DNA of 64,000 nucleotides from Piromyces finnis finn (lineage: Eukaryota > Fungi > Neocallimastigomycota). Location of the stretch: the NCBI GenBank assembly GCA_002104945.1, contig MCFH01000065.1:1-64000 (forward strand). Direction: 5' to 3'. Shown piece by piece: positions 3,144 to 54,224 of this stretch. The number at the start of each line of letters is the position of its first letter. Position 1 is the first letter of the stretch. The translations under genes and the position numbers were made by a program. Below the pieces are notes generated by a model, which saw only the letters and a list, made by a program, of their open reading frames with translations, did not search any database and was not told where the DNA came from.

Positions 3144-6100
3144 ATGAAATACTTTAATATTTTATTATTAACACGTAAGTTTCTTTTTTAATATTATAAT
3201 AGTAATAATTTCATTATATAATCATAGTTTGTAAAAAAAAATCCCATAGACAAAGAATAAAAATATTAAACTTATTCCTAATATATTTACAATTTTTTTT
3301 TTTTTTTTGTAATTCCTATAAAATATAGTTGTAGGTTCAGCCTACACAAAGGACAGTTATTTTGGTGATATTAAAAGAGCAGAATATTTTGAAAAAACGG
3401 ATTTTAAAATGCCAAAAATTACTGTTAACTTAAATGAAGAAGATTACAAAAACTTTTTCCTTACCTACCAATGTCATTATGATACAAGTAATAGATATCG
3501 TATTAGAAATGAAGAATGTTACAAAGCACCATGGATTGATCTTCATAACCTATTAGAAAATGCCTTTAGTAAATCCATTATTGAAAAAAGTAATATCACA
3601 AAATCAGAAGATTTAGAATTAATTAAAAATGTAAATATGACTCTTGAAAATTTCGAACATATTGTTCAAACCTATTCTAATAAAACTTTAGAAGATGTTT
3701 TTTCTTCAGCTCATGCATTATATAAAATTCCAGATTATGAAACTGAAAAAGCTGGTTTAACTTTTGAACTTGATGGGTAAAGATAATCTATACCATTTTT
3801 ATTTTTCCTTTTTTTTTTTTTTTTTTCAAAAATTGAATCTTTCGATACTATTGAATATTTAAAGTTTTTCTAATTATTATTATTTTTAAATATTTAATTT
3901 AATATACATATATTATAATCATTTACACTTATTTATAACTGGATTTATATATAAACTATTTATCTTTTTATTATTCAACAACTATTATTCAACAACTATT
4001 ATTCAACAATTATTATTCAACAATTATTATTCAACAATTATTATTCAACAACTATTATTCAACAATTGGTTTTATTTTTATTTAAATGATCTTTTTTTTA
4101 ATACTCAATAAAAAAAAAAATTAATTTTTAGTGAAAAAACGACAGTAGATAAAATTAAATTCTCGGTTGGTGGAAAATATACTAAATCCTTTGAAAAACT
4201 TGGATATAATGTCAAGGTTAAAAAGGGTCAACTTTTTGAAAGAAAACAATTTCGTTTTCGTTCTGAAACCGTAGATCCTTCTTTTATTAGAGAAAAATTA
4301 GCCTATGATATTTGTAATGTTATTGGCTTACCTTCCCTTTCCCTTAACTATGCTCGTATTTATTTTAATGAAAAATTCATGGGATTATACGCTGTAAGAG
4401 ACGCCTTTAAATCACAATGGATTGAATACACCTATGGAGAAAAATCTACCACACATTTATATACTTGTGATAGAAATTACGGTAGTAATATATTTTATAA
4501 TTGTATTAATGATGATGAAGACATTAAAGACGATCTTGATTGGAATAATTTTATTCAACGTCTTTCCAACACCAAGACAAGAGAAGAATTAGAAGAATTT
4601 TTCGATGTTAAAACGTTTATTAAATGGCAAGCCTTAAAATATTTATTTGGTTCCTGGGATCATATTACCAATGCTCATAATCAATTTATGTATATGTTCC
4701 ATGACACCACCACCGGAAAGGATCAATGGATTCCATTATTGTATGATTTTGATAGTGATTTTGGTGCTTATAAAGAAGCTAATCCTCGTCGATCTTTTTC
4801 CGAAGATATGGCTGAACTTTCTACCCCACTGTATAAACTTCTTAAATTAAATGATAATAATAAAGAACTTGTTGGGTATATTGAAGAATTTATGAAAAAG
4901 GCCTTCAATCCCAAAATTTTAATTCCAAGAATTGATCAATTAAAGCAATTCCTTTCACCCTACCTAAAGGAAGATCGTACTCCAGGAAACGATGATCGTT
5001 TACCCGGAAGAGTTAAACGAATTAACATTAAAATTGAAGACTATTTTTCCTATGATGATTTTAATGAAAATACCGAATTTACTACCATTAAACTTAACAA
5101 GTATTCTAGTGATACGGTATATAATACCGATAAAATTCTTGGTTTAAAATATTGGATTATTGAACGTTTCCAATATGCCTGTCAATTTTATCATTTTGAC
5201 TGTAGTTACGCCTCTGAATATTTAGATGATATTTCTTTTGCTTCCGGTGCTATTGAATACGATGAAAAGAATGGTGGTTGTCATAGTTCTGGATATGATT
5301 GTTGCTTATCCACTAAAGCCATCGTAACATCAGATGTCGTTGGTGATTGGGGTATTGAAAATAATGACTGGTGTCTTTTTGACGATTCTGTAAATAAAAA
5401 AGAAGAAGAATGTTGGTCATTATCCTATGGAACAGGTTATCCATGTTGTAAAGATAAAAACACCAAAGTTAACTATGTTTCTAAATCTACTGGAAAAGAA
5501 TGGGGTGTAGAAAATGGTAATTGGTGTGGAATAACAGATCTTCAACGTTGTCCAAGTTATGGTATTTATCAATGTTGTCAATCCTGCGATATTGTCTTTA
5601 CCGATACTGAGGATTGGGGTTTCGAAAATGGTAATTGGTGTTCTATTCCTCATTCATGTAAAACTTCTAATTCAAATACCACCACCACCACCACCACCAC
5701 CACAACAACAACAACAACAACAACAACAATATCAACTCCTACTACAACCACCACTACTACTGAAGAACCTGTTTCAACTACAACCACCACCACCACTACC
5801 ACTACTGAAGAACCAGCTTCATCTTCTACTACTACTACTACTACTACTACTACTGAAGAACCTGTTTCATATTCTACTACTACTACTACTACCACTACTG
5901 AAGAACCTGTTTCATCTTCTACTACTACTACTACTACTACTACTACTGAAGAACCTGCTTCATCTTCTACTACTACCACTACTACTACTGAAGAACCTGC
6001 TTCATCTTCTACTACTACCACTACTACTACTGAAGAACCTGCTTCATCTTCTACTACTACCACTACTGAAGAACCTATTTCAACTACCACCACAACAACA

Positions 6101-6652
6101 AGAAATAAAACTATTAATCATGAAAGAACTACTGAAACTTATAATAATGATCCAGCCACTGCTCTTACTGAAACTACTTACACTGCTGAAGAAATGGAAA
6201 CAGAAGATGAAACGGAAATGGAAACTACTATTCCAGTTACCACCACTACCACTACCACCACCACCACTACTACTACTACACCATCAACAACAACTACTAA
6301 AACAAAGAAAACTATAACTACTATAAAGGTTATTACCACAAAGAAAACAACCACAAAAACTAAAACCACAAAGAAAACTACTACTACAACAACTACTTCT
6401 ACTACTACCACAACAACTTCAAAAACAACGACTACTACTCAAATGGGATGGCCGGGTTGGCCATTCTGGCCAGGTTGGCAAGTACCAACATTTGATACTC
6501 CAAGTCCAACACCAAATGTTTGTAAAGAAGTTACTAAAGGTTATTATCCTTGTGGTGGTATTAACTATCCAAATGCTTCTCCATGTTGTGAGGAAGGTTT
6601 CCGTTGTGAAGTTCAAAATCCATATTTCCATATGTGTGTCAAGATTAATTAA
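3144..6652 (+). CDS. cotH: Secreted CotH-family kinase with 3 fungal dockerins (CBM10-like), Thr-rich linker and C-terminal CBM1-like domain; 3 exons (3144-3174, 3329-3776, 4132-6652)
   Basis: The GT-AG spliced frame is continuous and gives signal peptide MKYFNILLLTLVGSAYT. CotH motifs: GGKYTKSFEKLGYNVK, RSETVDPSFIREKL, WDH, YDFD. Three dockerins with CC...WGxENxxWC. C-terminal YYPCGGINYPNASPCCEEGFRCEVQNPYFHMC. Confidence 0.9.
3971..4067 (+). repeat. 14-bp minisatellite TTATTCAACAA(C/T)TA x7 in CotH intron 2
   Basis: Seven head-to-tail copies with no spacers. Confidence 0.9.
5670..6430 (+). repeat. Coding Thr-rich linker repeats (TTTTTEEPASSS units)
   Basis: ACT/ACC/ACA runs with about 8 EEP(A/V/I)S units, read from the ORF translation. 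Confidence 0.85.
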
Positions 6653-8030
6653 ATTTGATATTTTTTAAACTATTATTATAAATATTATATATATATAATA
6701 TTTATTGTATTATTATAAAAACATGTATACATAAATTAATATTTAACATTTTATATATTTTCTTTTATTGTGTAAAAAAAAAAAAAGATATTTAATGTAT
6801 ATTCATAGGTCAAAAACATTTTATTTTTACTCTTACATTTAATATATATTATAAAGATATATTAAATTTTACTTTAAATTTTTATTATTTATATTTTAAA
6901 TAAAATAAAAAAATTCTTTTTTTTGTTTGTTTTAATAAAAATAAAAATGAAAAAGATAATTAATTTTTATGAAACAATAATAAATAAAAAAAAAGAGTCA
7001 TTATAATTTTATTTTAGGATCCTCTCTTTGACATTGATCCAAAAAGAGAAATGATGCTTTGATTCAAAGTTACACTAAAATTTAGCAATCATTAAAATTC
7101 CTCAAATATAAAAAAAAAGTATTAGGAAAAGTATTATCCTTTATGTTATTTATTCATTCCTATTTACATTTAATTTTTTTTTATTTATTTATTTTTAAAT
7201 CTATTCAAATTATTATGGTTATTAATATAAATACTTTTAATACTTTTTAAATTTATTTTTAACTATCTTTTATTTTAAAACACATAATAATAACATTCAT
7301 AAATCTTTTATATACAATATTAATTATTAATAATAACCCAAACATAATTAATAACAAACAGAATAATAATAACGCTTACATTTAAATATTTAATTTATTA
7401 TGCCTATTAAATTTTTTATTTTTATCCCACCAAACAATAATTAATTATTACTATTATCATTTATTATTATACTTTTTTTTTTTTTTATATATATAAAATA
7501 TTATTATTATTATTATTATTATTATTATGATTATGATTATTATTAAAAAAGATATTTCTTTTTTTTTTTTTTTAGTCTTTATGTTGATATAAAACATTTT
7601 TTGTAATTAAAAAATAGATAAAAAAAAAAAAAAAGGAATTATTAATTTTATTTATAGAAACAAATTTTCATTTAAAATAATATAAACAATTCATTAATTA
7701 TTAATAGGAATAATAGCTATTTTTAATTTAAATATTATTTTCTTTTTTTTTTTTTGATTTAATCCTTTATTTTAAAGTTTAAAAAAGCATCAAATTTTAA
7801 TTATTATAAAATTAAAAAAAAAAGATGCTTCAAACAGTTACAATAATATATTCTTTTTTGTTATACATTTATTTTCTATTTTTTTTTTTTTCGTTATAAC
7901 ATTTACATTTTACACATTAATAAGTTTATAAATTTTGTGTTATAAAATCCAAAATTGAAAATTTAGAAATGATTAATGGATATTAATTATTGTTTTTTAT
8001 TTAATTTGGTTTGTTTGGGTTGAGTTTAAT

Positions 8031-9122
8031 TTATTTTGTGTCATAATCGATTGCAGGTGATTCTAATGTATCTCTGTAATCATAAGATGAGGTAACAGTG
8101 TAATTACGTTCAATATCGTAATTTGACGTAACAGTGTAATTACGTTCAATATCATAATTTGACGTCATTGTGTAATTACGATCAATATCACAATTTGATG
8201 TCACTGTATAGGTACGGTCAATTCCATCAGCAAAGATAATATCATGGAAAGCATTAATAACTTCATGACTGGATTCTTTACTAAAACTTGTATTACCACT
8301 AGTGGCGGAATGTATAGTACGTAATGTACCGGTAGAGTAATTACTACCATTATAATAGATATCATTTTGCATATTATCCATGGGTAATGGTGGTGGAGGT
8401 CTTTCTGGTGGTGGTCCTACTGGAGGGAAAGCAATACAATCATTTGGTAATGGATCTATCATACTCGTATCATTTTTATTTTTTGATGATTTTCTTTTAA
8501 TTAAGAAAATTGTACCACATACAACAACAGCTAATACTGAAAAAATAATACCACCCGTAAACATCCAAGAAGAATTGGAAATATTTTGACTGGATTTAAC
8601 AAAAGCAGAATTATTACTATTTCCAATTTGATTTACATTGTTGTTGGTATTATTACTAGTATTGTAGATAGTATTTGCATTAGAATTTACAGTGTTTGAT
8701 GTATAAGAATTGGTATTGGATGATATATCAGATCCATCTCTATTAGAAATAATTTCATTATTTGTTGTTGTTGTTTCTTTTTCAATAGTTGACGGTTTAA
8801 TTGAAGTGTTATCCGGTGATTTTGAATTATTATCGACTCTATTTGAATTTAATAAATTAAAAGTAACAGTTCCATCATTTTTGGTATTTTGCTTTGAAAC
8901 TGTTTTAATATTATTGGTTTTATTATTCTTCTTGACAGTTTGTTTGTTAACAGGTTTAAGGTTATTATTTACTTTTTGTTTTATCTTGGTGACTACTTTT
9001 TTAACAACTTTTTTATTTTGATTTGGATTGACATATCTTTTTCTTAATTCATTGTTTTTTTCCTTACTCATCTTACTCTTTTTATTTTGAATCTTGTGTG
9101 AATAATTAATATCCATTTTCAT
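8031..9122 (-). CDS. Single-pass membrane protein: Asn/Ser/Lys-rich N-terminal part, TM helix, Pro-rich motif, 12-aa Tyr repeats; 5' exon unresolved
   Basis: 363-aa ORF with hydrophobic WMFTGGIIFSVLAVVVCGTIFLI followed by KRK, PPPERPPPPLP, and 4x DI(D/E)RNYT(V/M)TSNY encoded by a 36-bp repeat at about 8092-8235. Confidence 0.7.
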   Translation of the reverse strand: MKMDINYSHKIQNKKSKMSKEKNNELRKRYVNPNQNKKVVKKVVTKIKQKVNNNLKPVNKQTVKKNNKTNNIKTVSKQNTKNDGTVTFNLLNSNRVDNNSKSPDNTSIKPSTIEKETTTTNNEIISNRDGSDISSNTNSYTSNTVNSNANTIYNTSNNTNNNVNQIGNSNNSAFVKSSQNISNSSWMFTGGIIFSVLAVVVCGTIFLIKRKSSKNKNDTSMIDPLPNDCIAFPPVGPPPERPPPPLPMDNMQNDIYYNGSNYSTGTLRTIHSATSGNTSFSKESSHEVINAFHDIIFADGIDRTYTVTSNCDIDRNYTMTSNYDIERNYTVTSNYDIERNYTVTSSYDYRDTLESPAIDYDTK

Positions 9123-10631
9123 TTTTTTTTTATTTTTATTATTTTTTATAACTATCTATCTATATTTATATTGTATTGTTTTTTTTTACAAAAAAAAAAA
9201 AAGTACTTTTTTATTCTAATATTTTCATATAATACACAATAAAACGAAATATTAATACATCATATTATTTCTTATCCACCTTCATAGAGGTAATTTTTTT
9301 TAATAATTTTTTTTAAAAAATTTAAAATAAGAAAGGGTTTTTTTACTCTATTTATACTTTTTTTTTTAATTATTATTAGTTATTATAGTTCTTTTTTTTC
9401 TTAATCACTAATCGACATGATTTTTAGTCGTTTAAAAAAATATTTAAAATTAATTAAAGTAAATGAAAAAAGGACCAAATCAATTTAAAAACAATAATAA
9501 AAACTAATTATTTTTAGTTAAAATTCTAGATTTTTTTTAATAAAACTACATAATAATAATTAAAAAAAAAAACAACTTTATATTAATAGTTTATTTTATA
9601 AAAAAAAAGTTCCTTTTCTCTTCTTCTTATCTGAATAGGAAAAAAAAAAGTTTTCAAAATAAAAACTTTAATTTTTCATAAAATATTATTTAGATTTTAA
9701 ACATATTTTTATAATTAAAAAAGTGGTACGAAAGGAAAGGAGAAAAAAAAAAACTATTAAAAAGTTGAAAAAGATATTTTATTTTATGATTAAAGGAATA
9801 ATAGTAAAAGGTAAAAAGGAAATTAATAGGAATGAGAAATGAGAAAATATGCAACGATAGATAATAAATAAAATACTATAAAACACACATAAAGTATGTT
9901 TTATTTTTTTCTATAATAATAAAATTCTCTTTTTAAAAAGATAATTATTAGATATAAATAACTTTTTTAATTATTTTTTGATTAAATAATATTAATAGTA
10001 ATTGAACTAAAATTCATTAAAAAAATATTAAAATACAACATTTTTTTAATCTTTTTTTTTTTTTTTTAAAACAGACCATTAAACCTAATTCATCCTAGAG
10101 ATAATAATAAGTAATCGTAATAATAATTTTGATATAATACTATCAATTATATAAAAGATTATTCTAATAAAGATGATAATAATTTGAATAATAAATATTA
10201 ATAAATATAAAAAATTACATTATTACATAATAATAATAAATAATAATAATAAAAAAAAAAAAGTCGAAAGTTTTTAAAAAGTTCAACAACTTCTCTCTTC
10301 CTCCTCCGTCGGAAAACTTTTTCCTTTTTTCCTAATAAAAAGGAAATTAAATTTAAAATTTTAAAATTTTATTTTTTATTTTTTTTATCCCAAAATTTAA
10401 AAATTAACCAATAAAATTCTTTTATTTTATTTTAAAATAGAATTTAATTTAAAATAAAAAAATATAATTCGTTCAAAATTTAAATAATAAATTAATTTTA
10501 AAATTAAAAATTAAATTAAAAAAAAATTGAACCAAAATTCATTAGGATTAGAAATGACGACTAGGGATAAAGAAGAGTAAGGCAAACATGCTTTTTATAA
10601 AAGTAGTTGGTAGGATATACCAGATACAACG

Positions 10632-10632
<1 letters not shown>

Positions 10633-10695
<63 letters not shown>

Positions 10696-10697
10696 TA
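10633..10697 (+). repeat. (TTTA)n microsatellite
   Basis: About 16 tandem TTTA units. Confidence 0.95.
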
Positions 10698-10919
10698 TAA
10701 AATCTATAGATTTAATAAAAATAATAAATAAATAATAGATAAAAAACTTTATTCATTCAAAATAAAATAACAAATATTATTAAGCTTAAATTAATAAAAA
10801 TTTAAACGTTGTAAGGTTTATTCAGCCTATACTTTTTTTTTTTTTATTACTACTATATAATTAAGTATACTATACATACATTATATAGCTATATATAACT
10901 ATATGTTATCTATAAAATA

Positions 10920-11427
10920 ATTTAAAAAGGTGATGTTTTTAATGACAGATATGTAACTCGGATGTATTATTTGGATAAGTTATTTGGATATGTAACTCGG
11001 ATGTGTTATTTGGATAGGTTATTTGGATAAGTTATCTTTATTTAAATATTCTTTATCTGACGATTTATTTTTTGAATGTTCTTTTTTTAATTGTTCTTTA
11101 TTTTTTATGGAAACAGAAAATTCAACAAGTAATTATTATACTTTGAGAAAGTATAACAAAAAAATATAATAATTCCTATTGATGTTTGATTTATACTATC
11201 ATTATCAGATGGTCCGTCTAATTGCATTCTACAATAGCCATTATCACATTTTTTAGATTAAAAATCTTTATTCCTTTTACACGTACCTCCTTGTGGTTTT
11301 CTACAATGTATATATGAATGTTTTAAAAAATATATCCGAATAAATATCCATCACAATGAACTATTGGAATTTCTTCATTAAAAATACAATAATGATTAAA
11401 TCATTTATTGGATAAACAATCAGAGTT
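10920..11427 (-). pseudogene. Cys-rich membrane-protein pseudogene fragment (host-type), cut off at the viral junction
   Basis: The minus strand reads NSDCLSNK*FNHYCIFNEEIPIVHCDGY.../HSYIHCRKPQGGTCKRNKDF*SKKCDNGYCRMQLDGPSDNDS-IGIIIFFC with stops and frameshifts. From recall, this Cys pattern matches a multicopy family in anaerobic fungi; not database-checked. Confidence 0.55.
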
Positions 11428-11429
11428 AA

Positions 11430-12404
11430 AATTTCATTTTAACTCTAAATCCTGGCGCTTTAGAATACTTTGCCGACATTAAGGCTTACTTAAAATCTTT
11501 GGTTGGTTTAAAGTATCTTTTGGTTACGGAACATATTGGACAGGCACAAAAACATTACCATATATTTGTCCAATACCAAAATTCAAAGAATTTGTCTATA
11601 AGAAGACTGAAGGGGGCTCACTTAGAACGCTGTTATGGCTCTGCCCAACAGAACATCCGCTACTGTAAGGCAGAGGATGAAAAACATATCAGAGACGGGG
11701 TCACTGCTATGTTAATCGAAGAAGAAGGTGAGCCTGTCTTTAAAGGTGGAAATTTTACTATCGGTTATTTACAAGATTGTGACAATCCAGATGAATTACC
11801 AGCTGTCTTATATAATACTTATCAAAAAATCAAATTGCAAAAGAAAAATAGATTATCTTTAGGGAGTTGGAGAAAGGAAGTCAAGGTTTACTACATCCAA
11901 GGTCCATCAGCAATTGGAAAATCGGAAAGAGCTGAAGAATTAATAAGAAAATATTACAATGACAAGGGCATCGAAGACCCTGACGAAATGTATTTCGATG
12001 AACTAAAATATGATAAATCTGGGTTTTATTCTGGAATAACTTTAGATAATCCATCTGAAGTTGCAGTTTTCGATGATTTCAGAGCTGGGATAATGAAGCC
12101 AGAAGAATTCATTAATCTTATTGATTATAGAGTTCATAATTTAAATATTAAAGGTGGGTCAGCTAAAAATAATTATAAATTAATAATTTTTACTTCTGTT
12201 CAAAAACTCTCTTCCATCTACAGAAATGTAGACGAATTTGAAAGAAGAGAACAATGGGAAAGAAGAATTCAATTAATTAATATGTATCCACCTGAAAGAG
12301 TTCATATAGGTGGTCTTCCAGTTGGTCATAGAACTGACTTTAACCAATTAGAAGAATATAGTGTAGAAGACACTGTAGATAACACAAGAATTGTAATAAA
12401 TTAA
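11430..12404 (+). CDS. rep: CRESS virus replication initiator (HUH endonuclease + SF3 helicase), 5'-truncated, no start codon
   Basis: Open for 324 codons. RCR motif I FILTLN, motif II HYHIFVQ, motif III NIRYCKA, Walker A GPSAIGKS, Walker B VFDDF, motif C IIFTSV, Arg finger QWERRI. Confidence 0.92.
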   Translation, partial: NFILTLNPGALEYFADIKAYLKSLVGLKYLLVTEHIGQAQKHYHIFVQYQNSKNLSIRRLKGAHLERCYGSAQQNIRYCKAEDEKHIRDGVTAMLIEEEGEPVFKGGNFTIGYLQDCDNPDELPAVLYNTYQKIKLQKKNRLSLGSWRKEVKVYYIQGPSAIGKSERAEELIRKYYNDKGIEDPDEMYFDELKYDKSGFYSGITLDNPSEVAVFDDFRAGIMKPEEFINLIDYRVHNLNIKGGSAKNNYKLIIFTSVQKLSSIYRNVDEFERREQWERRIQLINMYPPERVHIGGLPVGHRTDFNQLEEYSVEDTVDNTRIVIN

Positions 12405-12481
12405 TTTAAATAAAATTTAAATAAAGTTTATTTTACACCCATATCTTTTATTTATTTATTAATTGTTTTATATTACATTTA

Positions 12482-12868
12482 TTAATCACCAATTTGTGTT
12501 TCACTCCATGGATCATCATTTGGATCCACAATGTGAGTATCTGTTACAACTTGTAATGTTTCTTCATCAGTTGGTGTCCATCTTTGATAATGTTTAACAA
12601 GAGTATATTTAGTCTTAGGGTCTATTCTATAGTGTTTTTGTTCATAAAACGTTTTAATCATTAAACGACCACTTAAAGTACATACTTTATTAGATGGTTG
12701 AACAACAGTACCATCAGTTATAGTGGAACTTTCTGTATCACCACTAACCTGTCCCCAAAATTTAAATAAAGAACCACAAGTAAAACCTGGAATACCTGCT
12801 TGAGTCATAGTATTTCCAGTAGTCTTAAAATGTTTTTTATACTTCCATGCCCAATAACCTCTTTTAAC
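12482..12868 (-). CDS. C-terminal part of a putative capsid or second viral ORF
   Basis: The frame is open from VKRGYWAWKYKKHFKTTGNTMTQAGIPGF to PWSETQIGD* and converges on Rep. The capsid identity is inferred from position only. Confidence 0.5.
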   Translation of the reverse strand, partial: VKRGYWAWKYKKHFKTTGNTMTQAGIPGFTCGSLFKFWGQVSGDTESSTITDGTVVQPSNKVCTLSGRLMIKTFYEQKHYRIDPKTKYTLVKHYQRWTPTDEETLQVVTDTHIVDPNDDPWSETQIGD

Positions 12869-13326: not shown

Positions 13327-13472
13327 AAAATAAATAAATAAATAAATGAAATAAATAAATAAATAAATAAATAAAATAAATAAATAAATAAATGAAATAA
13401 ATAAATAAATAAATAAATAAAATAAATAAATAAATAAATAAATAAATAAAATAAATAAATAAATAAATAAAT
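13327..13472 (+). repeat. (AAAT)n microsatellite
   Basis: Long, slightly impure AAAT/AAAAT array. Confidence 0.95.
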
Positions 13473-13649
13473 AATAGTGATAAATAGGTCAGATTATATA
13501 AAAATGTAATTATTGGAAATAATTCCAAAAATTATATTTTTTTAAAACAATATTCTAAATCTATATATATATATATTTTAAAAAAAAATTACATATTTAT
13601 AAAATGATTTATAGTCCCTTTTATTTTTAATTTATTAAAAAATTAAATA

Positions 13650-22030: not shown

Positions 22031-28191
<6,161 letters not shown>

Positions 28192-49793: not shown

Positions 49794-52700
49794 TTATTTC
49801 TTTCTATTAAATTTTTTAAGTAGCCCCTTGCAATTTAGATTTTCTTCAGGCTCCCACGAAGCTTCATTAATTGAATACCCTTTCCATTTAATCAGGTATT
49901 GTATTTTTCCGTAATGTCTTCTTTTATCCAGAATTTCTTCAACTTCGTATTCTTCTTCATTGTCAACGGTAATAGGTGGCGGTGGTGGTTGAGATCTTCC
50001 AAATTTATCTTCGACATATTTCTCGAGATTGGATACATGAATAACTGGATGAATCTTAATAGATTTTGGGAGACTTAATTTAAATGTAACATTTGATATT
50101 TTTTCCAAGATTTTGTATGGGCCGAGTTTTCTTGGCTTAAATTTTTTATTTCCTTTGTGGATAATTAAAGAACTATCCAGCCAAACTTTAAAATTCGGAG
50201 CTTCTTTTCTACGTTTGTCAGCATGCTTCTTCTGGGTTTCCATGGCAGATTTTAAATTTTCTTTTAAGGTATTAATTAAAGTTTTAAAATCTCTTGTAAA
50301 CTCTTCTGCTCTTGGGACTTTAGATAAGTCTGGAATAACTGGTGAATATTTTGGATGAAAGCCGTAATTCAAAAAGAATGGAGAAAATTTGGATGATTCT
50401 TGAACCACGTTGTTATAACTAAATTCTGCAAGACTAAGAAAACTTTTCCAATTTGAACCTTTATAATTTGAGAAACATCTTAAATATTGTTCTATAACGG
50501 AGTTCACCCTCTCCGTCTGACCGTTTGATTGATGATGAAATGGAGTAGACAACTTAAGTTCAATGCCAAGGGAGGAACAGATGGATTGGAAGAATTTAGA
50601 AGTAAATTGAGAACCTCTATCCGAGACAATAGATTCAGGTAGGCCATGAAAACGGAAAATATTATCAATAAAGGCTGTGGCTGTTTCGGCGGCGGAAGGA
50701 ATACTTTTGAACGGAATGAGATGAACCATTTTTGTAAGACGATCAACAACAACAAGAATGCAAGTGAAACCAGAAGATGAAGGCAAATCTGTAATGAAAT
50801 CCATTGAAATGGATGACCAAGGACGCTCAGCAATATCAAGAGGATTCAGAAGACCATAAGGTTTATGACGAAAGGTTTTTGAACGACAACAAACTTCACA
50901 AGAACGAACGTAGTCTTTAACATCAGAAGAAATAGAAGGCCACCAGAAGTCTCTAGCAATAAGAGAAGATGTTTTCTTTATTCCGAAATGACCAGCTGAA
51001 GGAGAGTCGTGACAGAGTTTAAGAATTGAAAGACGACAATTTGGAGGAACATAGATTCTGTCAGTAAAAAGGAGAAAACTATTGCTTAAGGAAAATTTGT
51101 CAATTTGAGGGTGAGGTATTGGAGGTTTCCTACAATCAAGATATTCACAGATTTTATTGTAAAAGTCATCATTTATATATTCGGAAAGAAAAGAATCACT
51201 AATGGACGAAACAGAAGTCACAATGGCACAAAAGTTTTCAGGGCGAAGAACATTAAAAGGAACATCAGAAGAGGAATTCGAATTGATAGCATAATCAGGA
51301 CGACGAGATAGAGCATCAGGCTTACCGTTAGAAGAACCAGAACGATAAATAATAACAAAGTTAAATTCAGAGAGAAACAAAGCCCAGCGAACAAGACGTT
51401 GAGACATTTTTTCAGGTTTCTTTTGATAGAGTAAATTTCGATGATCCGAGTAAATCTTAAAAGTAGAAGAAGAGCCTTTAAGTAGATGACGCCATGTTTC
51501 AAGAGCAGCAACGATAGCTACGAGCTCTTTATCATATATTGGATAATTACGTTCAGGACCAGTAAGAGAGCGAGAAAAGAAAGCAACTGGATGGGTCATA
51601 TTATCAATTGGAGAGACTTGCGAGAGAATAGCACCAATGGCAAAGTTACTTGAATCAGTTTCGACTATGAATGGAAGTTCACGATTAGGAAATATAAGAA
51701 CAGGAGCAGAAACAAATAAGGACTTGAGTGAATCGAAAGCATCTTGAGCTTCTTTAGACCATACAAATTTAACATTTTTCTTCAAAAGTTTATGCAAAGG
51801 ATGAGCGATCTTTGCAAAATTTGGAATAAATCGACGGTAGTAGTTCGCAAGACCAAGAAAAGATTGAACCTCTTTAACATTAGATGGAGTAGGCCAGTTT
51901 AAAATAGAAGAAACTTTATTTGGGTCCATGTGAATACCATCAGTAGAAATCCTATGACCAAGGAAATCAATAAAAGAAACAAAAAACTCGCATTTTTCCA
52001 ATTTAGCATAGAGCCCAGCATCCCTCAGGAGTTTCAAAACAGTTTTGACATGAGAAATATGAGATTTATAATCAGAGGAAAAAATAATAATATCATCTAT
52101 GTAAGAGAAAGCGAATTTACCAAGAACGTCTTCAAGAACATCATTAATGAAATGTTGAAAAACAGCAGGTGCATTTTTCAACCCAAAAGGCATCACACAG
52201 TATTCAAAATGACCTAACTTGCAAGTAAAAGCGGTTTTATATTCATCACCACTTTTAATCCTGACCAAGTTATAGGCAGAACGAAGATCCAATTTTGAGA
52301 AAATCTTCCCTTTTCCAAGATGTTCAAGCATATCTTGTATAAGAGGAAGGGGATAAGAATCACGAATAGTTATGGAGTTTAATTGGCGATAGTCAACACA
52401 CATACGAAGTTGACCGTTTTTCTTAGGTACAAACAGAATAGGAGCTCCCGCAGGCGATTTTGATTTTCTAATAAATCCTTTCTTGAGATTTTCTTTTATA
52501 TATTCTTCTAAAGCAATTGATTCGGTTTCTGTTAGAGGATAAATCGGTCCATAAAACAGTTTTGAATTTTCTTTGAGTTTTATTTCACAATCGTATGGAC
52601 GGTGTGGAGGAAGTTTTTCAGCATTAGATTCATTGAAGACATCAGCAAAGTCAGAGAGAACATCCGGAAGTATAATAGAAGAATTGGGTTCTGATTTAGA

Positions 52701-54224
52701 GTTTGAATCGGATTTGAGAATAGAATTGGATTGAATATTAGAATCAGAAAAAGAAGTCAAAACAGAAGTTGGTTCTTGATTTGAGAGAGACGAAGTAGAA
52801 AAGTTAACAGAAGACTTCTTAGAAACAGAATTGTTAATATTTTTTGAAGAACCCGAACAGAGAATAGTACAAGTACGATTAGTTTCGTTTTGAGATTGGA
52901 TGTTTTGTTTATCGACAAATATAGGGTAAGCGAATGAATCATGCGGAGGTTCGTAGGAAGGATCTTCCATTGCAGGAAAAGCAGATCTTTCTTCAGGAAA
53001 TTCAGAGACATTATTGGAGAGTGTTATACAACGATTATAACAGTAATCGGATACAAATGAAATTTTGTTCTTTGTGAAATCGATAGAAGGATTGTGTTCT
53101 TTAAGCCAGTCTATTCCAAGAATACAAGGATAATAAGGTAGATCAGTTACATAGAATTGTGTTCGACAGAGATGATCTTTGTAGCGAAGATTCAAAGGAG
53201 ATGTAATTCCAAAAAGAGATTGTCGACCACCGATACCAACGATATTTGGGAGGTTACCATCATCATGATAAGGAATGTTATTATCGTTACAGTAATCTAC
53301 ATCAATTAAATTAAGTTTGGATCCTGAGTCAATAAGAATATCCGTATTTAGTTCATAAGAAAGTTTAAATTTAGTTGTCATTTTATTATGAGTTTTGTTT
53401 TCTTCTTTAGGAGCGGATATAAGTGTGGGAATAGATATTAGTGAAGGATTTTCACGATCTTTATTCTTTCTTTTTGGACAATTATTAATCTTATGACTTG
53501 AAGCACCACAATACACACAAAGATTTTCTTTCTTTCTTCTTTCCTTTTCTTCGTTTGAGATAGGGCCATGGTTATTCCTGTTTGTAATGGACTTTGTTAT
53601 TTTTGAAGAGTGATGAAAAGATCTTTTCTTTCGGTTTTGGTCATTGTTTGAACCAGAAGGGAAAAAGGTATGGTGTGTAGATAATCTTGAATCGATTCTT
53701 GAAGCAATAGTCTGTAATGAAAGAAGATCCCTAGGACCCGGAAACATTTCCAAAATACGAACTGCAACTTGTTGATTAAGGCCAGCTATAAATGCATCCA
53801 TTTTGGCTTGTTCATTCCAGTTTGATTCATCAGCATAGCGGTTAAATTCCAAGATATAGCCTCTAATTCCTCCTAATCGGCGTTGTTTTAAGGTTCTAAG
53901 CATTTGATTTGCAACATAGGTAGCATCGTTATAACCATAAAAAGCCTTAAATCTGTCAACAAAAGCTTGGTAGTTATTAAGACACGGATCATGGTTGTTT
54001 ATAAGAGTAGCAGCCCAATTCATAGCGTCCCCATAAAGTCTTGATATTATATAGAGAATTTTGGTTGCGTCGTCTTGATACCGTTCAGGATATAGCATAA
54101 ACACTAGCTCCACCTTAGCTAAGAAACCCTTCAGATACCTGCGATCCCCTGCAAAACCATCCTTAAGAGTTGCGTTTTCGAAAATATTATTATTATCCAT
54201 GTGGTTGTTTTCGTTCTCTTCCAT
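49794..54224 (-). CDS. gag-pol: Element F single-ORF Gag-Pol with C-terminal chromodomain (1476 aa)
   Basis: [102 protein letters not shown]; no stops. Confidence 0.95.

What the first reader, a model, noticed from the sequence alone, without database searches (positions are those of the whole stretch)
11428..12404. Endogenous CRESS-DNA virus Rep with an unbroken frame in an anaerobic fungus genome
Seen: 324 stop-free codons carry all RCR motifs (FILTLN, HYHIFVQ, YCKA) and SF3 motifs (GPSAIGKS, FDDF, IFTSV, WERRI), while the flanking genes are frameshifted pseudogenes. Only the few residues before motif I and the ATG are missing. Established: endogenous Reps are used to link orphan faecal CRESS viruses to hosts. 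Inference: this records an ssDNA virus infecting gut fungi and is either recent or under selection. The atypical motif C (TSVQ) suggests it is not a genomovirus; I cannot assign the family.
Basis: partly seen in the sequence, partly recalled or inferred. Interest (0 to 1): 0.8.

Follow-up and report, generated by a model that had tools for sequence, protein, structure and literature searches.

The report
ssDNA virus fossil in gut fungus
About half of a small circular single-stranded-DNA virus genome, with its replication gene still fully readable, sits in a chromosome of the anaerobic gut fungus Piromyces finnis, which points to anaerobic fungi as hosts of a large group of metagenome viruses that had no known host.

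Summary
The window is the first 64 kb of Piromyces finnis scaffold MCFH01000065.1.

The virus-derived stretch is 11428-12868. It holds Rep without its start, a 77-nt spacer, and the last 128 codons of a converging capsid gene. It has no replication origin.

A related copy elsewhere in P. finnis runs origin to origin over 2,908 bp and carries a hairpin origin. Further copies lie in Piromyces sp. E2 and two Neocallimastix genomes. More than 100 unnamed metagenome Reps (43-73% identical) sit mostly on 2.65-3.25 kb contigs, and the fungal copies fall at four or more separate places among them.

The unbroken frame is best explained by a recent insertion. Rep and the useless capsid stump both diverged from the other P. 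finnis copy under purifying selection, which points to divergence as viruses. Neutral drift since insertion is bounded at about 0.03-0.05 substitutions per site.

The Rep is of the circovirus/nanovirus type, not the geminivirus/genomovirus type. No classified family is close.

The library holds no paper linking such viruses to anaerobic fungi. I rate it a new member of a known kind.

The parts
11428..12868 (.). Whole virus-derived insert (endogenous viral element), 1,441 bp. This is about half of a ~2.9 kb circular ssDNA virus genome. It is cut at both ends inside genes and has no origin hairpin.
   Evidence: It is the only stretch of the window with DNA homology to the P. finnis unit in L002/L003 (83% over 1,440 bp). 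tblastn bounds come. GC is 0.316 against 0.19 and 0.23 in the 5-kb flanks. The origin 9-mer is absent here.
11430..12404 (+). Rep gene: 324 stop-free codons plus the stop codon. The start codon and about four first codons are absent (one 5' truncation). There are no internal stops or frameshifts.
   Evidence: All 28 columns invariant across 69 family members are kept. The copy departs at 1 of 84 columns conserved at 90% or more.
11430..11729 (+). HUH endonuclease domain of Rep (residues ~1-100), with motif I, motif II (H-Y-H) and the motif III Tyr.
   Evidence: Pfam Viral_Rep matches residues 26-81.
11883..12299 (+). SF3 helicase domain of Rep (residues ~152-290), with Walker A, Walker B, motif C and the arginine finger.
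   Evidence: Pfam RNA_helicase matches residues 155-256 at 25.1 bits against a cut-off of 21.5.
12405..12481 (.). Spacer of 77 nt between the converging 3' ends of Rep and Cap.
   Evidence: It is included in the blastn match to L002. A similar stretch also lies next to the second P. finnis unit.
12482..12868 (-). Capsid (Cap) gene stump: the last 128 codons plus the stop codon. The N-terminal ~360 codons are absent (one 5' truncation). There is no stop or frameshift in what remains.
   Evidence: It is 83% identical to residues 362-489 of the unbroken 489-aa Cap ORF of L002 and 39% identical to the 463-aa Cap P0144. The Cap family is identified.
11107..12404 (+). Public gene model BCR36DRAFT_416125 (P0001, 320 aa). 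A 22-nt first exon and a 335-nt GT-AG intron (11129-11463) join an upstream ATG to the Rep frame and skip motif I.
   Evidence: read against the sequence. No expression data were available to me.
4379..6652 (+). Neighbouring host gene, not part of the element: a CotH kinase-like protein with three CBM_10 dockerins and a CBM_1.
   Evidence: It marks the surrounding DNA as that of an anaerobic fungus.

Best explanation
This is an endogenous viral element: a dead, partial copy of a circular Rep-encoding ssDNA (CRESS) virus captured in the nuclear genome of Piromyces finnis. The parent virus had a genome of about 2.9 kb. Its roughly 330-aa Rep (HUH nickase plus SF3 helicase) and its 430-530-aa jelly-roll capsid protein are read towards each other, and a hairpin origin lies just upstream of Rep on the opposite strand. 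In such viruses Rep nicks the loop of the hairpin, primes rolling-circle replication, and unwinds DNA as a hexamer; this is established knowledge for the class and was not tested here. The window holds only Rep without its start, the 3' spacer and the last quarter of Cap. It has no origin and no whole capsid gene, so the fragment cannot act as a virus. Both ends lie inside genes and not at the origin nick site. I therefore infer capture of a fragment of double-stranded replicative DNA by non-homologous joining, or later deletion, and not Rep-mediated insertion. The Rep frame is unbroken most likely because the insertion is young, not because the fungus maintains it. The window copy and the other P. 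finnis copy are separate insertions of two related viruses. The lineage has entered Neocallimastigomycota genomes repeatedly, which makes anaerobic fungi the probable hosts of the free relatives.
For: Shown:
- Host scaffold identity and the dockerin-gene neighbour.
- Rep identity by Pfam, profile against PDB, and fold.
- Cap identity: 56 relatives, two of which depositors call capsid proteins, and a pLDDT-82 model matching many CRESS capsids.
- Insert bounds of 11428-12868.
- An origin-to-origin unit in P. finnis scaffold 57 / contig 148. Its hairpin has a 12-bp stem and an 11-nt loop, folds with z -4.95, and the two origin 9-mers lie 2,908 bp apart.
- Metagenome relatives pile up at 2.65-3.25 kb: 47 of 114 Rep contigs and 36 of 49 Cap contigs. 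Only 4 and 0 contigs lie between 3.25 and 10 kb.
- Fungal Rep copies are never monophyletic in 100 bootstrap NJ trees, and three have metagenome sisters (support 100, 84, 66).

For a recent insertion:
- dN/dS between the window and the L002 copy is 0.03 for Rep (dS 1.45).
- It is 0.19 for the Cap stump, which cannot make a capsid, so that constraint must predate truncation.
- There is no flank homology between the two loci.
- The stop-free state bounds neutral change at about 0.03-0.05 substitutions per site (95%).
- The window copy departs at only 1 of 84 highly conserved columns, against a median of 2 for the metagenome Reps.
- The insert GC of 0.316 has not drifted to the flank level of 0.19-0.23.

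Against an artefact: the assembly was made from PacBio reads of DNA size-selected above 10 kb (PMC5622200).
Against: No read-level check of the two junctions was possible. No expression data were seen, so host use of the frame is not excluded. The three P. finnis Rep copies group together (100/100) and are closer to each other than to any metagenome Rep. One old insertion followed by copying would also give this pattern, and only the Cap-stump constraint and the lack of shared flanks argue against it. I did not inspect the DNA of the metagenome contigs. Ten contig lengths are shared between the Rep and Cap lists, but several such coincidences are expected by chance. NJ trees on gene-model proteins are rough.
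Confidence: 0.85

Rival explanations
1. Domesticated Rep: the fungus keeps and expresses the frame under its own purifying selection, for example through the annotated spliced model. The product would be a helicase or a Rep-like protein that interferes with incoming viruses.
For: The frame has 324 unbroken codons. All invariant residues are kept. A GT-AG intron can join an upstream ATG to the frame in the public model. dN/dS against the paralogue is 0.03. Rep of the integrated chytrid virus BdDV-1 is highly expressed.
Against: The Cap stump is useless as a capsid gene, yet it is equally free of stops and also shows dN/dS below 1. The lack of decay is therefore a property of the whole insert, not of Rep alone. 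The model skips motif I. The other copies I read through show damage. The P. finnis paralogue Rep has one in-frame stop. The N. lanati Rep runs in two frames. The Piromyces sp. E2 Rep matches in at least three pieces in different frames. No orthologous copy is known, and the search for a flank orthologue failed.
Confidence: 0.1
2. Assembly artefact or contamination: reads of a free virus present in the culture were wrongly joined to fungal DNA.
For: The insert lies only 11 kb from a scaffold end in a repeat-rich region. A near-complete relative exists in the same assembly.
Against: The library was PacBio-only and size-selected above 10 kb, which removes 3-kb circles. The insert is a half genome cut inside two genes, not a unit circle. 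It is 83% identical to the other copy, not identical, so it is not a mis-placed duplicate. Relatives lie in large scaffolds of four other assemblies.
Confidence: 0.03
3. Not viral: an HUH protein of a bacterial plasmid, or of a Helitron-type transposon.
For: Pfam Viral_Rep is below its curated cut-off for this single sequence (21.8 against 26 bits). Motif III lacks the usual lysine.
Against: A capsid gene converges on Rep here and in three other fungal loci. The paralogue has a hairpin origin. The helicase is SF3, and there is no Helitron-like architecture. The family profile hits solved viral Rep structures. The 50 listed best fold matches are viral Reps wherever a name is given. No bacterial or plasmid name appears among the 120 listed of 204 hits.
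Confidence: 0.01

Closest known systems
BdDV-1, the CRESS virus integrated in the chytrid Batrachochytrium dendrobatidis (preprint 10.1101/2023.03.16.532857)
   Same: It is a Rep + Cap ssDNA virus found integrated in the nuclear genome of a zoosporic fungus. Extra partial Rep copies lie beside it, and it sits in a gene-poor region near mobile elements.
   Different: BdDV-1 is placed in Circoviridae, has an inferred unit of 2.2 kb, and lacks a recognisable hairpin origin. The lineage here has a 2.9-kb unit with a clear hairpin in the paralogue, a capsid protein about twice as long, and a different host phylum. I made no direct sequence comparison.
Unclassified metagenome CRESS viruses with a 430-530-aa capsid protein, e.g. 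QCH00643.1 'Cap [Gemycircularvirus sp.]' (3,085-nt record) and WPS96436.1 'MAG: capsid protein [Cressdnaviricota sp.]'
   Same: Their Cap is 37% identical over 85% of the P. finnis Cap. The best viral fold match is a 459-aa protein at 38% identity. Genome size is the same.
   Different: They are free genomes of unknown host. The 'Gemycircularvirus' label is the depositor's and does not fit the Rep type found here. Their Reps were not among the 120 listed Rep hits.
Circoviridae (Rep type and origin)
   Same: Rep has the PF02407-type nuclease plus an SF3 helicase. The family profile matches the solved structure 7lar at E 3.8e-7; the library holds a paper on the porcine circovirus 2 Rep structure (PMC8406172). 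The loop 9-mer read from L002 is, to my knowledge, the form common in circoviruses; this is from memory and was not tested.
   Different: The unit is 2.9 kb and Cap is 460-490 aa, against roughly 2 kb and a much shorter Cap in circoviruses (from my knowledge). No Rep in the viral fold library is more than 25% identical. Motif III lacks the conserved lysine.
Host assignment of orphan CRESS families through integrated Rep copies in protist genomes (Entamoeba and Giardia; Naryaviridae, Nenyaviridae, Vilyaviridae). This comparison is from my own knowledge and was not checked here.
   Same: The logic is the same: integrated Rep copies in a gut eukaryote, nested among faecal or metagenome viruses, point to the microbe as host and not to the animal.
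   Different: The hosts and virus lineages differ. No sequence comparison was made, because the reference genomes were not fetched.

Membership tests
CRESS-DNA virus Rep (Cressdnaviricota-type HUH + SF3 protein) | HUH endonuclease motifs I, II and III in order | tested here: met
   All three are present in the frame. The motif I Asn, both motif II His and the motif III Tyr are invariant in 69/69 relatives. One departure: there is no conserved Lys after the Tyr.
CRESS-DNA virus Rep (Cressdnaviricota-type HUH + SF3 protein) | SF3 helicase with Walker A, Walker B, motif C and an arginine finger | tested here: met
   Pfam PF00910 scores 25.1 bits against a cut-off of 21.5 and hits 64/69 relatives. 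The profile against solved Rep structures gives E 2.5e-15.
CRESS-DNA virus Rep (Cressdnaviricota-type HUH + SF3 protein) | Curated Pfam nuclease model Viral_Rep (PF02407) at its gathering score | tested here: inconclusive
   The window copy scores 21.8 bits, below the cut-off of 26. 42 of 69 relatives hit at E <= 0.01. The fold search supplies the missing support.
CRESS-DNA virus genome | Linked capsid gene and a hairpin origin with a loop nonanucleotide | tested here: met
   Met in the P. finnis paralogue unit. In the window itself only the last 128 Cap codons are present and there is no origin.
Endogenous viral element | Virus-derived DNA contiguous with host chromosomal DNA and incomplete as a virus | tested here: met
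   The insert lies inside a 291-kb fungal scaffold between host genes and is cut in both genes. Read-level support for the junctions is not testable with these tools.
Circoviridae | Genome of about 2 kb with a short capsid protein, and Rep clustering with members of the family | tested here: not met
   The unit is 2,908 bp and Cap is 463-489 aa. The best viral-library Reps are 25% identical or less and are unclassified. A family-level tree was not built because the reference genomes were not fetched.
Genomoviridae / Geminiviridae-type Rep | Gemini_AL1-type catalytic domain (PF00799) | tested here: not met
   There is no hit for the window copy. It hits 1 of 69 relatives, weakly, at E 0.0049.
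Domesticated (exapted) viral gene | Orthologous copies across species, constraint on host branches, and expression | not testable with these tools
   The exact protein is found on one contig only. The flank-orthologue search found nothing in other fungi. There is no RNA-seq tool. The constraint seen also covers the Cap stump.
Helitron or plasmid rolling-circle Rep | No capsid partner, with a Pif1-type helicase (Helitron) or a bacterial plasmid context | tested here: not met
   The helicase is SF3 and a capsid partner is present. No plasmid or bacterial names appear among the listed hits.

The most novel reading that the evidence does not exclude
The fungus keeps the Rep frame as a gene of its own and expresses it through the annotated spliced model. 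The product would lack motif I and so could not nick DNA. It could still bind or oligomerise like Rep and act as a brake on infection by the related free viruses, making it a virus-derived defence gene in an early-diverging fungus.
Probability: 0.1. Interest if true: 0.8.

Novelty: new member of a known kind. Interest (0 to 1): 0.6.

Why it matters
Most small circular ssDNA viruses found in gut and faecal metagenomes have no known host. This case gives a concrete host lead for a large group of them. That group comprises more than 200 Rep clusters at 90% identity and about 50 capsid clusters. Their relatives are inserted at four or more separate points of the Rep tree into genomes of Piromyces and Neocallimastix.

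Within the paper library I could search, no paper links CRESS viruses to Neocallimastigomycota. The one described case in zoosporic fungi is in a chytrid.

Anaerobic fungi are major fibre degraders in herbivores, so a resident DNA-virus lineage bears on their ecology. The finding also shows that many 'animal-associated' CRESS viruses may belong to gut microbes and not to the animal.

Tried and rejected
1. A second Rep copy in the window: none found.
2. More virus-derived sequence in the flanks (10.4-11.4 kb and 12.9-13.9 kb): only low-complexity repeats and short ORFs without similarity.
3. An origin hairpin in the window: absent. The single 9-mer match at 24002 is at chance level.
4. A synteny test for the age of the insert, using the 363-aa left neighbour: one distant metagenome hit and no orthologue in another fungus.
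5. Pfam on the Cap: no family.
6. The Cap model against solved structures: only generic jelly rolls at low TM-score.
7. Linking Rep and Cap contigs by equal length: ten shared lengths, but several are expected by chance, so I do not lean on it.
8. Tracing the two named Cap records in the literature: nothing found.
9. The large all-against-all protein search was not used, because the word search and family scans had already settled the protein.
10. I did not build or search the joined two-exon product of the public gene model. Its second exon is the open frame itself, which was searched by reference.

Full report
**1. The observation**

Translating the + strand in the frame of the listed ORF gives 324 codons without a stop, from 11430 to 12401, with a stop codon at 12402-12404.
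- Every quoted motif is in that frame.
- No ATG opens the frame.
- The other five frames of the same 972 nt hold 20-34 stops each.
- At local base composition, an open run of this length has a probability of about 1e-12 to 1e-15.

The only virus-derived neighbour is a truncated capsid stump with no break in it, and the rest is host ORFs and AT-rich spacer.

**2. Where the window comes from**

The best protein hit is Piromyces finnis BCR36DRAFT_416125 (99% identity). Its contig look-up returns coordinates identical to the window's, so the window is the first 64 kb of scaffold MCFH01000065.1 of GCA_002104945.1.
- GC is 14-36% across the window.
- A gene 5 kb to the left encodes CotH plus three CBM_10 dockerins plus CBM_1, a hallmark of anaerobic-fungal cellulosome proteins.
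- The right half of the window is packed with Ty3/Gypsy-type retrotransposon ORFs.

The public gene model reaches an upstream ATG through a 22-nt exon and a 335-nt GT-AG intron, and it skips motif I. I could not check whether any transcript supports it.

**3. What the protein is**

Several independent searches agree that it is a CRESS-type Rep.
- Pfam gives RNA_helicase (SF3) above its cut-off and Viral_Rep just below its cut-off.
- Across 69 relatives, 64 hit RNA_helicase, 42 hit Viral_Rep and only 1 hits Gemini_AL1.
- A profile of the family matches solved 'Replication-associated protein' structures at E 2.5e-15, and 7lar at E 3.8e-7.
- An AlphaFold model built with that alignment has mean pLDDT 86.7.
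- Its 50 listed best matches in the viral fold library are CRESS-virus Reps wherever a name is given, and none is more than 25% identical.

The 28 columns invariant in the family are all kept in the window copy. Two features are family traits and not decay:
- Motif C reads T-S-[V/I]-Q in nearly all members.
- Motif III keeps the Tyr but has no conserved Lys after it.

**4. The extent of the insert**

DNA homology to the other P. finnis locus (L002/L003) runs from 11428 to 12865 at 83% identity and stops there on both sides. Downstream of Rep, on the minus strand, the last 128 codons of a gene (12485-12868) are 83% identical to the end of an unbroken 489-aa ORF in L002.

That protein family has no Pfam model, but three results identify it as a capsid:
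- It has 56 relatives, two of which depositors name as capsid proteins.
- A model of the 463-aa P. finnis member has pLDDT 82.
- That model matches many CRESS-virus capsid proteins, and only generic jelly rolls among solved structures.

The insert is therefore Rep without its start, a 77-nt spacer and a quarter of Cap, 1,441 bp in all.

**5. The whole virus as seen in the same fungus**

L002 (contig 148) and L003 (scaffold 57) are 99.6% identical over 12.8 kb, so I treat them as one locus. That locus contains:
- A hairpin lying roughly 10 nt upstream of the Rep start, with a 12-bp stem and an 11-nt loop. It folds far better than shuffled controls (z -4.95) and carries its loop 9-mer on the strand opposite Rep.
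- A second copy of that 9-mer 2,908 bp away, followed by the first codons of another Rep. This makes an origin-to-origin unit with a short terminal redundancy.
- A Rep with one in-frame stop and an unbroken Cap within that unit.
- A second, partial unit nearby, with an unbroken 463-aa Cap, the first 93 Rep codons and a remnant of a Rep 3' end.

**6. Other fungi and the free relatives**

Rep copies are present in four other fungal assemblies.
- Piromyces sp. E2 has two Rep copies. One lies beside a Cap on a 155-kb contig that carries four Cap-like gene models in all. That Rep matches in at least three pieces in different frames.
- Neocallimastix lanati has one copy running in two frames, with no Cap within 6 kb. 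The same protein occurs in three assemblies and in at least 24 metagenome contigs.
- Neocallimastix sp. 'constans' has one copy.

More than 100 unnamed metagenome Reps are 43-73% identical to the window copy. Their contigs pile up at 2.65-3.25 kb: 47 of 114 for Rep and 36 of 49 for Cap. Almost none lie between 3.25 and 10 kb. This is the pattern of complete small genomes, and it matches the 2,908-bp unit.

In NJ trees with 100 bootstraps:
- The fungal copies are never monophyletic.
- Three fungal lineages have metagenome sisters (support 100, 84 and 66).
- The three P. finnis copies group together (100).

**7. Recent, or maintained by the fungus?**

Between the window copy and the L002 copy, Rep is 84% identical in DNA but 93.5% in protein. 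That gives dN/dS 0.03, with dS 1.45. The Cap stump gives dN/dS 0.19.

A quarter of a capsid gene cannot be useful as a capsid. The constraint it records must therefore have acted before the truncation, while both lineages were still viruses. Together with the absence of shared flanks, this makes the two loci separate insertions of related viruses.

For the time since insertion:
- 6-9% of possible substitutions in the Rep frame would create a stop. An intact frame therefore bounds neutral change at about 0.01 (median) to 0.03-0.05 (95%) substitutions per site.
- The copy departs from highly conserved columns no more often than the metagenome Reps do: 1 of 84, against a median of 2.
- Its GC has not relaxed towards the flanks.

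I therefore favour a young insertion, at about two chances in three within the main explanation. Host use remains possible and is the main rival.

**8. Artefact?**

The assembly came from PacBio reads of DNA size-selected above 10 kb (PMC5622200). That selection would exclude 3-kb circles, and such reads would be long enough to cross a 1.4-kb insert. I could not inspect the reads.

**9. Family placement and novelty**

The Rep type is circovirus/nanovirus-like, not geminivirus/genomovirus-like. To my knowledge the loop 9-mer is of the circovirus kind (memory, not tested). However, unit length, capsid size and Rep distance all exclude Circoviridae as defined. No classified family came back as a close named hit.

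Searches of the paper library found nothing linking CRESS viruses to Neocallimastigomycota. The BdDV-1 preprint describes its virus as the first CRESS mycovirus of zoosporic fungi. The kind of finding is well known: an integrated Rep that points to a host. The host phylum and the virus lineage appear to be new.
Noticed in passing
window 32399-59706: At least five Ty3/Gypsy-type LTR-retrotransposon gag-pol ORFs lie here. One (49794-54224, minus strand) is a single 1,476-aa ORF with gag, RT, RNase H, integrase and a chromodomain. The viral insert therefore sits in a repeat-rich, gene-poor stretch 11 kb from the scaffold start.
   Followed up: partly
L002 3758-6740 (= L003 ~7920-10900), P. finnis contig 148 / scaffold 57: An origin-to-origin 2,908-bp copy of a related virus. 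It has the hairpin origin, a Rep with one in-frame stop and an unbroken 489-aa Cap. A partial second origin and the first codons of another Rep follow it.
   Followed up: yes
L002 11084-12823 and L008 6701-8392: A second, partial unit. An unbroken 463-aa Cap (only 39% identical to the first Cap) lies head to head with a 93-codon Rep fragment. Only about 21 nt and no hairpin lie between the two starts.
   Followed up: partly
L005-L007 (Neocallimastix lanati and relatives), gene at 6001-6861: The N. lanati Rep copy occurs as the identical protein in three assemblies and in at least 24 metagenome contigs of 2-20 kb. It looks like a fixed chromosomal copy that surfaces in metagenomes. It runs in two frames, and there is no Cap within 6 kb.
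   Followed up: partly
window 10948-11038: A tandem repeat with a 13-nt period (about seven units) lies 390 bp left of the insert. It is not shared with the L002 unit and is not obviously an iteron set.
   Followed up: partly
window 10636-10707 and 13328-13480: (TTTA)n and (AAAT)n microsatellites bracket the insert region in inverted sense, about 2.6 kb apart. This is probably the ordinary low complexity of this genome.
   Followed up: no
window 23674-28191 (+): A 1,505-aa ORF with no Pfam hit lies in a stretch with strong A-over-T and G-over-C skew.
   Followed up: no
alignment A1, window Rep residues 78-83 and 255-258: Two lineage signatures. Motif III has an invariant Tyr and an invariant Asp five residues later, but no conserved Lys. 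Motif C is T-S-[V/I]-Q.
   Followed up: partly
window 11430-12401 versus 12485-12868: Synonymous divergence from the L002 copy is 1.45 for Rep but 0.68 for the Cap stump. This could be recombination between the two gene modules, or saturation noise.
   Followed up: no
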